From positions 1,426,001-1,490,000 of the forward strand of contig NW_025767635.1 of the NCBI RefSeq assembly GCF_003918875.1: a DNA stretch of 64,000 bases, in the 5' to 3' direction. Both the position numbers and the translations under genes were made by a program. The DNA comes from Haliotis rubra. Its lineage: Eukaryota. Of this stretch, positions 1 to 4,932 are shown piece after piece; position 1 is the first letter of the stretch; the number at the start of each line of letters is the position of its first letter. A model generated the notes under the pieces. The model saw nothing but the letters and a program-made list of their open reading frames with translations, made no database searches and was not told the origin of the DNA.

Positions 1-29
1 CCAGGAGGTCCGCTTCCGAGTTACCGTCT

Positions 30-1300
30 GTGCATGCAGTGAGGGAGGAGTGGATCAGAATAAAGGAACTGGAGCGACTTGTTGCTAGATTTGACCATGA
101 ACCATGTATGACCGATGTCTATGCCAATGAGGAGCGTTTACAGGCAGTGACTGCTGCAATATCAGAAATGGAACTAGATGACTACTATGACATTGACACT
201 GATGAAGAGCTGAGACTATGGAATTACCTGCTAGAGCTTCTTCACACTCGTTGCATGAATTTGGAGTTGACACTGAGCCTGCAGAAGATCTTCCAGGAGA
301 TGCTGTGCAACTTGGACTGGATGGAAGGGACCACAGCCTGGCTTACATCTGAGGGTGATGGTTGGCACCTGATGGAGGTGGAGGAGTTGCAGCAGCGACT
401 ATTGGAAGCCTGACATCCATGTAGTGGCAGAGAAGGTGGAAACTGTGAACAGTTCAGCCTCCCGTTTTACTGAAGCGACTTGTGGGACTTCTGTGACCCT
501 GATGTGGGAAAAAGCTAATGCTTATTTTGGGGAATCGGCTTATGATGAACTGAAAAAACTTGTTGAGCAGAGAGCGATCTCGTGTGGAAGAGGATGCAGC
601 TCTACAGGAACATGAAAGATGAGGAAGGATGGATCAGGGAGAAGAAACAACTTATGTCATCACTTGACTTTGGACTTAACCCACCAGTACTTCGCCTGCT
701 GCTGAACAAGCATGACACGATGGAGGAGGAGATGAATGCCCGCCACAGCCATCTCCAGTCAGTACTACAAGTGGGAGACATCCTCGTTGCTGCAGGCAAT
801 TTCTGTGCTGACAAGATTCAGCAACACATCAATGAGGTCAAACAGCAGTGGCGCAGCCTGGTGGACCTAAGCTGATGAAACGAGCTTGAAAGAAAGCGAC
901 TGTTTGTTGCCATGGATTTCCACCCAGTTCGTTGATTCTGGCAAGGTGGCGCCTTGACACTTGGATGAAGGACACTTTACAACTAGGGTCCATGGAAGAC
1001 GTGATTCAAGATGATGAGGCCAGTGTTCAATCAGCTTTGAAGCAGAAACATGGAGGAGGTGACTGAGGAGCTCAAGAGCTATCAGAATGTTATTGTGAAC
1101 CTGCATAAGCAGGCCATCGGTCTGGGAGAGGAGTACTGTGAATGTCATTTGGTCAGGAGTCGATTGAATAATATTGACTATTGTTACCAGAGACTTCTGG
1201 AACTCGCTGAATGGCGGAAGCAGAGACTGGTTAATGCACTGTATCAGTACAAAGTCCTCATTGAGAGTGAAGGTGTGGAAACAATGATTGATGAGAGTGA
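30..1300 (+). pseudogene. Intronless beta-spectrin fragment (about spectrin repeats 1-6), broken by stops, frameshifts and internal deletions
   Basis: ORFs 30..413, 582..875 and 1050..1610 match beta-spectrin as I recall it: LERLVARFD, LRLWNYLLELL...LQKIFQEML..LDWME, EEGWIREKKQLMSS, LLELAEWRKQRLVNALYQYKVLIESEGVETMI. The pieces are collinear and no introns lie between them. Confidence 0.85.
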
Positions 1301-1422
1301 ACACACTCAGGATGATGCAGTCCTGGACCTCGGGGATAATGATGGTTCAGTAGACTTGGATGAGGGGGATGTTGTAGATTTTGAAGAAGTGAGGGAGGGT
1401 TTGACTGTCCCCGAAGTACCCT

Positions 1423-3462
1423 TTGTTCCTGCCCTTGCTACACCTACTACACCAGCAAATATCAAGACTGTTCCTCCGGCAGTCAAATCAACGCGTTCTG
1501 CAGCAGCTAAAGCGACACGATCACCCACCCACCAAAAGTGCTTTGGCAGCAAAGTCACAGGCGACACAGGGAGTTCCTGCTGGGAATGCTACTCGATCAT
1601 CTTCACCTAAAGTAGCGGTATCAGCAAACACAGCAACAGAAAAAGGGAACATTCCTAAGCATCCGGTCACTCTGTTCGACCAAACAGATGATTCTTTTGA
1701 GGTGAGTCTTGATGACACTCAGATGAATGAGATTGTTGCGGACCAGAAGGAGAACGATGGAGAAAGAAAGACTGCTGACAGAGACACCTCAGCAACAACT
1801 GATGAGGTTGTGAGAGGTTGCGGAGAGAATATCAAAGCGAGAACAGGGGGCTTAAGCATGATAGCAGAAGGGGGTCTACCCCCCTGGCCACCAGATGGCG
1901 CCCTAGTGAGCTGTGGTAAGGAGGATGCAGATGGTGTTCTCCTCAGCAACACAGGTCTGAACGTTAAATGTTTGCCGCTGTGGATACCCGACGGTCACAC
2001 CAGGGAGGGTGGTCAATCTCCCGTTTTGGAGATGGGGGCTTCGATAACAGGTAAGGCACGCCTCCAAATGGATGGAGAGACGAACCGGCAGGACGTGCTG
2101 GTGGCACAAATCAGCAATCAGCTCATCCTGGGACTTCACTTAGCCGACAGGCACTGCACAAACATTGATGTGCAACCAGGGACAGTTACCATTGGCGGGT
2201 GTGAGATCCCGGTAACGTTCAGGACCAGAGAGTCTGTTGTATGCCAAGGGGCCATTCCAAGGGCAGTGTCGTGTGGACCGCACACAGCTACCAGACTACC
2301 ATGCCATGACCATGTTGACAGTCAAGAGTTGAACCAATCCCCGGTGGAGCCTGTTTCAGAAACCAGGCGGTGTGCATTAAGTTTGGGGAACCTACATCAA
2401 GGGCAATGCTCTGCTTTGGTGTACTTGATCAACACGGCTGACCCCTTAGTGAAGGTACACAAGGGTCAGCACATTGGCAATGCAGTTGAAGACAGACAGG
2501 GTGAGGAGACCAACAGCGTTATCTGTAGGGCCTCTTCCATTGCGAAGGTAGGGGAGGGTGTCCTACGGAAACTTCCATTGCTAGACATGCCCAACGAGAT
2601 GGACATGTGTATTTTGGACACAGACGGCTCTGGCCTAGCTGTCAGGATTGAGCTACCCTTAGGGCAAGAGAGAGGGGCCAGTTGTGGTCGTTGCTCATTA
2701 ACCCTAGAGCAGCGGGGGTATGGCCAAACTCACAAGAAGATGCTGGTGGATGTTCGCCTTCCAAGACAGTATTGCCACTACCTGTTGGGGCATTATTTTC
2801 TGATGCGGATGGACCACAACAGTTGGAGGTGGTCGCTTAATTTCGAATCGTCTGACAGACAGCTGGCCTGCTGGCCTGAGACACTGAGCCCTTATGACAT
2901 GAAGGTTGAATATCGTCCAGGGACCAAAGAAATGGCCGATGAAGCAGACTGTGACAGCTGCCAGAGGTTGGTTGAGTTACACAAGCTCCCATGCGGGGGC
3001 TGTCAAAATGCTCGCCAACGAGGGGATCAGTTCCACAAGGACGTAGAGTACATCCTTCCATTAGCTGGCCGACCTTGGACAGTCAGGGGGGTAACAGGGG
3101 TGGAAGATAACAGCTACTTGGGAGAGATCCCTACCAGGTGGGACCCCGGTGGGATGAGCAAGAATCAGGCAGAAGATCAGGGGCATTCTCTTGAACAGAG
3201 TGACCCCAAATCCTACCCGGAGAAGATTCACACTGATCCCAAGTGTAGGACAGTTGTGGGATTGCACCCCAGAGTGGGCGCCAATCTGGTTGTGAGGCGT
3301 GCCCGCCTGCCGCTTCGCTCTTTGGCGGGGCGTCCTCTGCGTGGTGGGGCTAGACGACACCGCAGAGGCCAACGAGTGGAGAGGACAGGAAAAAGTTTTG
3401 AGGGAGCTGGCACCGAACATCCCGGCTGGGTGCCCGGTAGTGGTATGGGTTCGTGGGCCTGA
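1423..3462 (+). CDS. Chimeric degenerate Gypsy pol ORF: protease remnant, linker, RNase H and TatD N-terminus; RT and integrase cores absent
   Basis: 679-codon ORF with RNase H at about 2608-2925. No YxDD RT motif and no integrase DDE region. The ORF runs into DPKSYP...GLHP (TatD-like). Confidence 0.65.
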   Translation: MFLPLLHLLHQQISRLFLRQSNQRVLQQLKRHDHPPTKSALAAKSQATQGVPAGNATRSSSPKVAVSANTATEKGNIPKHPVTLFDQTDDSFEVSLDDTQMNEIVADQKENDGERKTADRDTSATTDEVVRGCGENIKARTGGLSMIAEGGLPPWPPDGALVSCGKEDADGVLLSNTGLNVKCLPLWIPDGHTREGGQSPVLEMGASITGKARLQMDGETNRQDVLVAQISNQLILGLHLADRHCTNIDVQPGTVTIGGCEIPVTFRTRESVVCQGAIPRAVSCGPHTATRLPCHDHVDSQELNQSPVEPVSETRRCALSLGNLHQGQCSALVYLINTADPLVKVHKGQHIGNAVEDRQGEETNSVICRASSIAKVGEGVLRKLPLLDMPNEMDMCILDTDGSGLAVRIELPLGQERGASCGRCSLTLEQRGYGQTHKKMLVDVRLPRQYCHYLLGHYFLMRMDHNSWRWSLNFESSDRQLACWPETLSPYDMKVEYRPGTKEMADEADCDSCQRLVELHKLPCGGCQNARQRGDQFHKDVEYILPLAGRPWTVRGVTGVEDNSYLGEIPTRWDPGGMSKNQAEDQGHSLEQSDPKSYPEKIHTDPKCRTVVGLHPRVGANLVVRRARLPLRSLAGRPLRGGARRHRRGQRVERTGKSFEGAGTEHPGWVPGSGMGSWA

Positions 3463-3830
3463 GGGGGATGAGCTGGCTGGATCATCCCACACCCGGGTCA
3501 TCCGGGTGTTGAAGGAATGCCTTCCCCAAGATAAACCCTTGGTAGTCCCCAACTTCACCAGAGAGGAGGGGACGGACCAGGAATGGTTGGAGGGGTTCTC
3601 ACAATCTTGTTTCAGTTTCACCTCCCGGGTGGTGGAATTTCCCCAGGGCCAGATGGTGTGGTTAAGGGCGGTGCCAGAGGATAGGGTGCTGATGGGGACA
3701 GACTGTCCCGACACTGGGCCGGGAAGGTTGCACCCTGAACTCCAGTGTTGCTGTGCTATGTGACGCAAGTGGTAGCAAGAAAGAGGGACTTCTCTTGACC
3801 ACAAACGTCAACGCGGCTCGGCTGTTCACT
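3193..3830 (+). pseudogene. TatD-family (TIM-barrel nuclease)-like domain, frameshifted and with substituted metal ligands
   Basis: TatD-like motifs in order across frames: GLHP; VVGLD (GExGLD); PVVVWVR (PVVxH.R); PNF (HCF); WLEGF; VPEDRVLMGTDCP (IP.DRLLLETDxP); C-terminal TTNVNAARLF at about 3798-3827. Confidence 0.7.
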
Positions 3831-4317
3831 CTGGGGGACGCCGTGGGTCTCATCCAATGGTAGGGTGAGGCTCGTGTAATGCCTAATGTTTTCTGGGCTC
3901 CACCCAAGACGGGGGTGGGGTCTGTGTGCGCCAGTAGCAGCCAGTTGGCCCCACCTAATGGCTAGGTGGGGTTGGATGGCCTTTGGCAGGTCATCAGTGT
4001 CGCTCCGAAGTGGAGTGGGACTTTCCTAGAGACTGTAAAAGACTGCGGGTCTTACTTGATGGTACGAGTGGGACCTGAACCCTATATGATATGGACGATT
4101 GGTCCCACCGAGGATACGGTGGAATCCACACCAGAAAGCCGGAAGCTAGGTGCTTGCGGAATCAGGGTGACTGAGGGGAGGACCCCTTGGTGTGCCGCGC
4201 AGAAAGGATACCCCTCGGGAGACAGTTACGAGAAGACCCCTTGGCTGAGGACGGCATGGTGTACTTCCTATGGAGGGTGTACTTCCTGTGGAGGGGGCCT
4301 TTTAAAACGGGGAGGAA

Positions 4318-4545
4318 TATGGTGATCACCGGTCACCCTTGCTAGAGATGGTGCTAATGACCGGTGTCGGGAGGTAATAGGAACAGCCGGAAAAACAGCG
4401 AGTCTATGCCAGCCATTCTGTGAGTACACAACGCCTTATCTGGGGTCTACCTAAATCCTTAGGTTAGGGCTATATTACCGCAGAGTGCGAGCCATAGCTA
4501 ACTCCATAGGTGTTCCGCCGTAGTGGTGAACTAGTTTTCACTACA
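4318..4545 (+). repeat. Putative 3' LTR of the Gypsy-type element
   Basis: Follows the PPT directly. TATGGTG at the start is a two-mismatch inverted match to the terminal CACTACA. The sequence becomes AT-rich after 4545. The partner LTR is not in the window. Confidence 0.55.
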
Positions 4546-4932
4546 GTACCAAAAATAAAATCAACCTGTGGAACAATGACCAAGACCAACAATAAAACTA
4601 TGATTAAAATCAGTATTTAGTTAAAACAAAAGGATCAAAGCACAAAAGCGATTAATTGAAACCATCACATGTCATTATCAAAGTAGAGTGTCATTTCACA
4701 TATGAGATTTCTAACCTTTCCAAGCAGAAACAAATTCTGAAATATTTTTTCACATCTTGTAGCAGATGGGAGCCCCTCCCGTGTTAAGTCACAAGCCGTT
4801 TTGGGGGAAACGAGCGCGGTGTTGGTTATTGTGTTGCACTTGTCCATCAGTTGTATTCCAGTCGTTTTTCGTTTACCAACAACGTGTATCATTATATTTC
4901 AATACAAACAGTGTGTCATCAAACATACATAC

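What the first reader, a model, noticed from the sequence alone, without database searches (positions are those of the whole stretch)
30..1300. Processed beta-spectrin mRNA apparently captured inside the LTR element
Seen: about 1.3 kb of collinear beta-spectrin-like repeats without introns, with internal deletions, on the same strand as and running directly into the pol remnant. Established: animal beta-spectrin genes are intron-rich, and LTR elements can capture host mRNA by template switching. Inference: the element transduced host spectrin, giving a spectrin-protease-RNase H-TatD chimera. If multicopy, it could be a source of spectrin-matching small RNAs.
Basis: partly seen in the sequence, partly recalled or inferred. 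Interest (0 to 1): 0.7.

Follow-up and report, generated by a model that had tools for sequence, protein, structure and literature searches.

The report
Spectrin gene fragment captured by retrotransposon
A jumping element with long terminal repeats has picked up intron-free pieces of two host genes (beta-spectrin and a SAFB-like gene), fused them to its own coding sequence and spread the chimera to at least nine places in this genome; this is a clear new example of a mechanism already known from flies, fish, birds, mammals and maize.

Summary
Window 36-1296 is a collinear beta-spectrin fragment (PDB beta-spectrin residues about 405-870). It matches the host gene on contig C2245 exon by exon, and seven introns of 229-586 nt are precisely absent.

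- **Element limits.** The 5' LTR lies 1.57 kb left of the window and is 99.1% identical to the 3' LTR at 4318-4545. A perfect 4-bp target duplication (GTAC) brackets the whole 6.35-kb element.
- **Second host gene.** The spectrin piece does not run directly into pol. A fragment of a SAFB-like gene (window 1289-1877) lies between them, joined through an 8-nt microhomology.
- **Copies.** The chimera occurs at least 9 times. Six copies carry this LTR type at five distinct loci, four of them with their own perfect TSD.
- **Second family.** Three more copies sit in a second LTR family that shares only the spectrin-SAFB-protease module. That family's 5' half matches about 11-kb elements with long open frames.
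- **Coding state.** In the one sampled copy with identical, gap-free LTRs, the module is part of an open 802-codon frame. The window copy is broken by 18 private frameshifting indels, and no read contig shows the ones the tool listed.

This matches LTR-mediated retroposition (Tan et al. 2016) and the maize Bs1 element, so it is a new member of a known kind. Small RNAs were not tested.

The parts
1..15 (+). Last 15 nt of a 35-nt stretch (C2745:1425981-1426015) that is also present in the gag region of the abundant B-type elements. It forms the left edge of the module shared by both LTR families. Left of the window lie the 5' TSD (C2745:1424195-1424198), the 5' LTR (1424199-1424426), the leader and a 204-codon gag-position ORF (1425083-1425697).
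36..1296 (+). Intronless beta-spectrin fragment covering parts of 9 host exons, with internal deletions. In this copy it is broken by 18 private frameshifting indels.
1289..1296 (+). Switch point from spectrin to the SAFB-like gene. The 8 nt TTGATGAG are present in both donor genes.
1289..1877 (+). Fragment of a SAFB-like transcription modulator gene. The donor-like locus is C1957:983849-986879 on the minus strand. The fragment lacks 1.8 kb of donor DNA that starts at a GT (apparently an intron) and most of the donor's PAAKxTPS tandem repeat.
1878..2484 (+). Retroelement protease-region remnant, reading LLSNTG where D[T/S]G is expected, with an ILGLH motif. The module shared with the second LTR family ends at 2484.
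   Evidence: Pfam finds no family, so the protease call rests on motifs read by eye.
2611..2895 (+). RNase H domain remnant. No reverse-transcriptase domain lies between the protease remnant and this domain.
   Evidence: PF17917, E 5e-7. A relative, L036, keeps RT, RNase H and integrase in that order.
3299..3763 (+). TatD-like ORF between pol and the 3' LTR. It is the subject of another finding and is shared with diverged relatives.
4304..4317 (+). Polypurine tract AAAACGGGGAGGAA.
4318..4545 (+). 3' LTR (TATGG...CACTACA), with 2 mismatches to the 5' LTR.
4546..4549 (+). 3' copy of the target-site duplication GTAC.

Best explanation
The window holds the right-hand three quarters of a 6.35-kb non-autonomous Ty3/gypsy-type LTR retrotransposon (C2745:1424199-1430545). 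Its internal region is a chimera. The N-terminal part of the element's gag-position ORF is followed by an intronless fragment of host beta-spectrin mRNA, then a fragment of a host SAFB-like mRNA, then a protease remnant, an RNase H remnant (reverse transcriptase is missing) and a TatD-like ORF.

The host pieces were most likely copied in during reverse transcription, by template switches from element RNA to co-packaged cellular mRNAs and back. This is LTR-mediated retroposition. The capture itself and help in trans are inferred. Later transposition as one unit is shown.

The spectrin-SAFB-protease module was also exchanged by recombination between two related LTR families. The master lineages kept it as part of one long sense ORF. 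The window copy is a recent insertion whose spectrin part is no longer readable.
For: Shown:
- LTR pair 99.1% identical, with polypurine tract and perfect TSD GTAC around the whole unit.
- Seven host introns are precisely absent.
- The fragment is an internal piece of the coding sequence, without poly(A).
- An 8-nt microhomology, TTGATGAG, sits at the spectrin/SAFB switch point.
- Six copies carry this LTR type, at five distinct flanking loci. Four loci have their own perfect 4-bp TSD (GTAC, ATAG, GAAG, TGTT); a fifth copy has a cut 5' LTR.
- Three copies in a second LTR family (223-bp LTRs, PBS TGGCGC, TSD GCCC) share only L038 3980-6484.
- Internal deletions and junctions are shared by all copies, which points to a single capture.
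- DNA-run contigs of two organism labels cross both host/host and host/pol junctions.
- A relative with the same gag but without the module keeps RT, RNase H and integrase.
- The second family's LTR, leader and gag match about 11-kb elements with open frames up to 1501 codons.

Inferred: template switching inside particles, help in trans, and the direction of module transfer.

The mechanism and its hallmarks are described in PMC5131818.
Against: - Nucleotide identity to the best host gene is only 72-86% (dS about 0.3-0.5). Either the capture is old or the true donor paralogue is not the one found.
- No closer protease was found in the genome than 52-55% amino-acid identity, so the original captor lineage is unidentified.
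- No RNA evidence is certain. Run X7 is only guessed to be RNA.
Confidence: 0.9

Rival explanations
1. The captured module is not just cargo. The gag-spectrin-SAFB-protease fusion protein is made and is needed by the element, for example as a coiled-coil scaffold standing in for the lost capsid part of Gag or as a protein that exploits helper particles. On this reading the master copies are kept open by selection.
For: - Copy L047, whose LTRs are identical and gap-free, has an open 802-codon frame through the whole module.
- A sister copy is open for 505 codons from gag into spectrin, and an A-type copy for 517 codons.
- Every copy is almost fully tiled by long sense-strand stop-free stretches.
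- No substitution-type stop appears in the window copy when it is read in that frame.
- Under neutrality P(no stop) is 9e-3 at 6% divergence and 4e-4 at 10%. dN to the host gene is 0.23-0.28.
- dN/dS between the two families is about 0.6.
Against: - dN/dS of 0.5-0.9 is close to neutral, and my rough chi-square on the counts gives only P about 0.05.
- The divergence used assumes that C2245 is the true donor.
- Copies with broken frames still have 98-100% identical LTRs, so a broken frame did not stop transposition or arose after it.
- Non-autonomous elements in general need no ORF.
- There is no transcript or protein evidence.
Confidence: 0.2
2. An ordinary LINE-type processed pseudogene of spectrin landed inside a pre-existing LTR element, and the nested pair was then copied.
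For: Nested insertions in LTR elements are common. This is general knowledge and nothing specific here supports it.
Against: - There is no poly(A) tract and no separate TSD at the fragment ends.
- The fragment is an internal piece of the coding sequence, roughly residues 405-870, not a 3'-anchored copy.
- It is fused in frame to gag on one side and to a second host fragment on the other.
Confidence: 0.03
3. The multicopy state comes from DNA-level segmental duplication or from assembly redundancy, not from retrotransposition of the chimera.
For: Two copies (C790 and C2608) do share flanks and TSD at 99.5-99.9% identity. They are probably haplotigs or a recent duplication.
Against: The other copies have unrelated flanks and different perfect 4-bp TSDs. 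LTR pairs are 98.2-100% identical within copies, while copies differ by 5-10% from each other.
Confidence: 0.03

Closest known systems
LTR-mediated retrocopies of metazoans (Tan et al. 2016, PMC5131818)
   Same: Partial intronless mRNA copies lie inside a discontinuous LTR element. [quoted passage not shown]
   Different: [quoted passage not shown] The only named relative found here is from an abalone, so this is probably a mollusc.
- Here the chimera reached at least 9 copies.
- It is shared by two LTR families.
- It is far more diverged from its parent gene (about 76-86% identity) than the young cases studied there.
Maize Bs1 (Elrouby and Bureau, as summarised in PMC5131818)
   Same: A non-autonomous LTR element that lost RT and carries fragments of several unlinked host genes. 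It is present in a few copies that all share the same switch points. From my own knowledge, not checked here, Bs1 also has a chimeric gag-host ORF.
   Different: Bs1 is a plant element with different donor genes. No exchange of the captured module between two LTR families has been reported for Bs1, to my knowledge.
Replication-defective transducing retroviruses with gag-onc fusions (my own knowledge)
   Same: A host mRNA segment replaces part of gag-pol and is fused in frame to Gag. The element depends on a helper, and it arose by recombination during reverse transcription.
   Different: There is no env and no sign of an infectious virus. The cargo is a structural repeat protein and a nuclear-matrix protein fragment. 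It is a germ-line multicopy element.

Membership tests
LTR-mediated retrocopy / chimeric pseudo-LTR retrotransposon | Host-derived sequence lacks the parental introns | tested here: met
   Seven spectrin introns (229-586 nt) are precisely absent. The SAFB-like part skips 1.8 kb of donor DNA that begins with GT after the upstream block.
LTR-mediated retrocopy / chimeric pseudo-LTR retrotransposon | Host fragment lies between the two LTRs of one element, and the TSD flanks the whole unit | tested here: met
   LTRs lie at C2745:1424199-1424426 and window 4318-4545, with GTAC on both sides.
LTR-mediated retrocopy / chimeric pseudo-LTR retrotransposon | Partial mRNA, with no poly(A) tail and no own TSD | tested here: met
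   The fragment is an internal piece of the coding sequence, about residues 405-870. Its ends are fused to gag and to the SAFB-like fragment.
LTR-mediated retrocopy / chimeric pseudo-LTR retrotransposon | Microsimilarity at the switch points | tested here: inconclusive
   Met at spectrin/SAFB, where the 8 nt TTGATGAG occur in both donors. The gag/spectrin and SAFB/protease junctions could not be judged without the native element sequence.
LTR-mediated retrocopy / chimeric pseudo-LTR retrotransposon | Secondary retroposition: several copies with the same switch points at different sites | tested here: met
   At least 9 copies. TSDs are GTAC, ATAG, GAAG and TGTT in the A family and GCCC in the B family.
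LTR-mediated retrocopy / chimeric pseudo-LTR retrotransposon | Co-transcription with the flanking element | tested here: inconclusive
   One 1361-nt contig of the B-type form comes from run X7, whose RNA nature is only a guess.
Ty3/gypsy (Metaviridae) LTR retrotransposon | pol order PR-RT-RNase H-IN | tested here: inconclusive
   The window copy has a PR remnant and RNase H but no RT or clear IN. Relative L036 has RT, RNase H and integrase core in that order.
Ty3/gypsy (Metaviridae) LTR retrotransposon | LTRs with TG..CA ends, a PBS after the 5' LTR, a PPT before the 3' LTR, and a short TSD | tested here: inconclusive
   PPT and 4-bp TSD are met. The LTR starts TA (TATGG), not TG, and the sequence after the 5' LTR (GTGACGCCGCG) lacks the usual TGG. 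The second family is canonical, with TG..CA ends and PBS TGGCGC.
LINE-type processed pseudogene | 3' poly(A), own 7-20 bp TSD, 3'-anchored copy | tested here: not met
   None of the three is present.

The most novel reading that the evidence does not exclude
The spectrin-repeat and SAFB-like insert has taken the place of the capsid/nucleocapsid part of Gag. It is kept open by selection because the fusion protein does something for the element, such as acting as a scaffold or a helper-exploiting protein, or for the host. Its spread into two LTR families by recombination would then reflect that advantage.
Probability: 0.18. Interest if true: 0.65.

Novelty: new member of a known kind. Interest (0 to 1): 0.45.

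Why it matters
This is a well-documented case of an LTR element capturing two host mRNAs, which is one route to exon shuffling. It probably comes from a mollusc, a group in which I found no described example.

It shows three things that are seldom seen together. The chimera amplified to about nine copies. The captured module moved between two LTR families. One long sense frame survived despite about 24% divergence from the parent gene.

It also gives annotators a concrete warning. The 'spectrin-like' ORFs at these loci are transposon cargo, not genes.

Tried and rejected
- **Naming the second host fragment.** Pfam and the protein atlas found nothing, and the word-based protein search was blank. 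Only the full HMMER search named it.
- **Fetching more genome sequence.** The native gag/protease sequence at two switch points therefore could not be read.
- **The C1702 relative (L050).** It shows no 5' LTR within 7.6 kb and was not pursued.
- **Left end of the spectrin homology.** I first placed it at window -20. That was rejected, because the 35 nt from there on are also present in B-type gag. Clear spectrin homology starts at window 36.
- **Exon-boundary coincidence.** The end of the spectrin fragment coincides with a host exon end. I considered this a sign of a spliced fusion transcript. The 8-nt microhomology with the SAFB-like gene explains it more simply.
- **The window copy's 18 private indels.** The read contigs do not show whether they are real or assembly errors. 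Contigs show only the in-frame form, but contigs drop rare variants.
- **Complex prediction and structure prediction.** Neither was run, because no claim here depends on them.

Full report
**Coordinates.** The window is G000:C2745:1426001-1490000. Locus L038 is C2745:1422001-1431000, so a window position equals the L038 position minus 4000.

Yes.
- Pieces of the sense strand between window 30 and 1300 hit the Pfam spectrin repeat. The best is E 2.9e-18 for window:582-875.
- They also hit a solved beta-spectrin chain. 8iah_M scores E 1.4e-19, with window:30-413 aligned to residues 409-569.
- A search of the window's own genome finds a host gene on C2245 that matches block by block: window 110-198, 209-325, 336-481, 531-712, 720-868, 954-1037, 1054-1129 and 1157-1296, at 72-86% identity.
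- One more upstream exon, ending ...ALREELIR, accounts for window 36-60.
- I printed each of the seven junctions between the eight blocks. The host has GT...AG introns with 229-586 nt between blocks, and the element is contiguous there.
- At three junctions the number of exonic bases between the blocks is exactly the same in host and element: 10 = 10, 27 = 27 and 'CCAG|TTC'.
- At two junctions 15 nt are missing.
- About 33 codons are missing inside one exon (RKAGMRETW...ATKK).

I compared the host gene exon by exon. I built no joined (spliced) model for any search tool.

**2. What surrounds it?**

*LTRs and target duplication.*
This lies 1.57 kb left of the window and has 2 mismatches in 227 nt.
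- The LTRs read TATGG...CACTACA.
- The polypurine tract AAAACGGGGAGGAA abuts the 3' LTR.
- GTAC flanks both ends.
- The element is therefore 6,347 bp long, and the spectrin fragment lies inside it in sense orientation.

*Between the 5' LTR and the spectrin part.* There is a leader and a 204-codon ORF with no Pfam match. Homologues of this ORF sit in the same position in many LTR elements of this genome. I call it the gag-position ORF.

*After the spectrin part.* The sequence does not go straight into pol.
- Window 1289-1877 matches a locus on C1957 at 79-82% identity.
- The large exon at that locus is collinear with the N-terminal 319 residues of a protein that NCBI names 'SAFB-like transcription modulator' of Haliotis rubra. 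Identity is 59-65% and E is 6.8e-34. That protein carries an RRM domain.
- The element skips 1.8 kb of donor DNA between two matching blocks. The skipped DNA starts with GT, as an intron would. The element also lacks most of the donor's PAAKxTPS repeat.
- At the spectrin/SAFB switch point both donor genes read TTGATGAG.

*Downstream of the SAFB-like fragment.*
- A protease-region remnant follows, reading LLSNTG... and ILGLH. This call rests on motifs read by eye; Pfam finds no family there.
- Next comes an RNase H remnant (PF17917). No reverse transcriptase lies between the two.
- A TatD-like ORF comes next.
- Relative L036 on C2097 has the same gag (78-90% identity) and keeps RT, RNase H and integrase in gypsy order. 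It lacks everything from L038 3980 to 6387.

**3. Copies**

The spectrin part occurs at least 9 times.

*A family.* Six copies carry the same LTR type:
- C2745, C790, C266, C509, C2616 and C2608.
- Four have unrelated flanks and their own perfect 4-bp TSDs: GTAC, ATAG, GAAG and TGTT.
- C2616 has a cut 5' LTR.
- C790 and C2608 share flanks at 99.5-99.9% identity. They are probably two haplotypes or a recent duplication.

*B family.* Three further copies (C641, C1490, C2289) belong to a different LTR family:
- Its LTRs are 223 bp and read TGTGG...CACTACA. The PBS is TGGCGC... and the PPT is AAAACAGGGAGGGA.
- The TSD of the C641 copy is GCCC.
- A and B copies share only L038 3980-6484, that is window -20 to 2484. 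This stretch holds spectrin, the SAFB-like fragment and the protease remnant, in the same orientation.
- All copies share the internal deletions and the junctions. One capture event therefore explains them all.

*Origin of the B backbone.*
- The B family's LTR, leader and gag match a large family that includes LTR pairs about 10-11.7 kb apart. These elements have open frames of up to 1501 codons over the protease region. They are plausible helpers. This is an inference.
- The module's protease is only 52-55% identical in amino acids to theirs.
- Homology to B-type gag reaches 35 nt into the shared module.
- After the module, the B copies resume with B-type sequence that normally lies upstream of the protease.
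- The module was therefore moved between families by recombination. The direction remains open.

*Age of the insertions.* LTR pairs are 98.2-100% identical in every copy, while copies differ from each other by 5-10%. The family has replicated for a long time, and the extant insertions are young.

**4. Coding state**

- The C641 copy (L047), whose LTRs are identical and gap-free, has an open 802-codon frame. It runs from B-type gag sequence through the whole spectrin fragment and the SAFB-like fragment into the protease remnant. Pfam Spectrin scores E 1e-41 on it, and PDB beta-spectrin scores E 1.5e-98.
- A single stop separates this frame from the gag-position ORF in the same reading frame. 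The sister copy on C1490 is open across that point for 505 codons.
- An A-type copy (C266) is open for 517 codons from gag into spectrin.
- Every copy is almost fully tiled by long sense-strand stop-free stretches.
- The window copy differs from the open frame by 25 indels. Eighteen of them shift the frame, and 16 of those lie between window 409 and 1052. None is shared with another copy. No stop was created by substitution.
- Contigs built from short-read DNA runs do not show the window's version at any of the 12 indel sites the tool listed; 30 more rows were not shown. Contigs drop rare variants, so I cannot say whether these indels are real or assembly errors.

*Selection tests.*
- Against the host gene, dN is 0.23-0.28 and dS is 0.33-0.50, giving a ratio of 0.48-0.87.
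- Between the A and B modules the ratio is about 0.6. My own rough chi-square on the counts gives P of about 0.05, which is marginal.
- A random substitution in this frame makes a stop with probability 0.0415. The chance of staying open is 9e-3 at 6% neutral divergence and 4e-4 at 10%.
- This favours some selection against stops in the master lineages. It depends on C2245 being the true donor.

**5. Independent support from reads**

- DNA-run contigs of two organism labels cross both the spectrin/SAFB and the SAFB/protease junctions (table 8). The junctions are therefore not an assembly chimera, and the module exists in a second organism label.
- One run that is only guessed to be RNA holds a 1361-nt contig of a B-type form. 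This contig still has the 126 nt that extant B copies of this genome lack. It is weak evidence for transcription, and I do not build on it.

**6. Comparison with what is known**

- The anatomy fits the LTR-mediated retroposition described by Tan et al. 2016 (PMC5131818). The shared traits are partial intronless copies inside discontinuous LTR elements, microsimilarity at switch points, chimeras of several parental genes, sense orientation and further retroposition as pseudo-LTR elements.
- It also fits maize Bs1, as summarised in that paper.
- I found no paper on a spectrin capture or on such a case in molluscs.
The only named relative found is from an abalone, so 'mollusc' is an inference.

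**7.

It was not tested, because no small-RNA run was available. The longest exact matches between the copies and host spectrin exons are 24-27 nt. Cross-targeting is therefore conceivable but would rest on very few sites.

**8. Limits kept**

I only state where copies are broken. I did not rank the copies for any purpose.

**Verdict.** It is a new, unusually rich example of a known mechanism.

Noticed in passing
L042 (C790:36501-45000) versus L046 (C2608:23401-31500): The two loci have the same flanks, the same TSD (ATAG) and 99.5-99.9% identical outer parts. The central 2.3 kb is only 93-95% alike. In C2608 this part is 98.7% identical to the B-family copy on C641 and lacks L038 3878-3980. 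This could be gene conversion by a B copy, allelic recombinants or a misassembly.
   Followed up: partly
L036 (C2097:1100676-1104198), positions 1-560: This relative has the same gag and retains RT, RNase H and integrase. It jumps from the equivalent of L038 3980 to 6387 with about 18 nt in between. Its left breakpoint coincides with the left edge of the spectrin module. No explanation so far accounts for this coincidence.
   Followed up: partly
window 386-1052: A cluster of private small indels lies here: 22 in all, of which 16 shift the frame. The copy's LTRs differ at only 2 of 227 positions. Short-read contigs show only the other, in-frame form at the sites listed. These may be long-read assembly errors inside a repeat.
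   Followed up: partly
window 3239-4547; L050 (C1702), L034 (C2486), L037 (C546): The TatD-like ORF together with the 3' LTR is 70-77% identical to elements on other contigs. The TatD-like part therefore looks like an old component of this LTR lineage, not a recent capture.
   Followed up: partly
L038 2427-2445 (C2745:1424427-1424445): The sequence right after the 5' LTR (GTGACGCCGCGAACACC) has no TGG of a standard tRNA primer-binding site, and the LTR begins TA rather than TG. The related B family is canonical.
   Followed up: no
L038 1130-1665 (C2745:1423130-1423665), upstream of the element: Self-comparison shows many overlapping direct repeats (77-88% identity, offsets of about 60-80 nt and multiples) in the flanking DNA, which suggests a diverged tandem array. 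Similar arrays flank the C1490 and C2289 copies.
   Followed up: no
L041 3775-5067, minus strand (C1957): The SAFB-like donor exon holds a long run of near-perfect PAAK(V/A)TPS repeats. These are collapsed in the captured copy.
   Followed up: no
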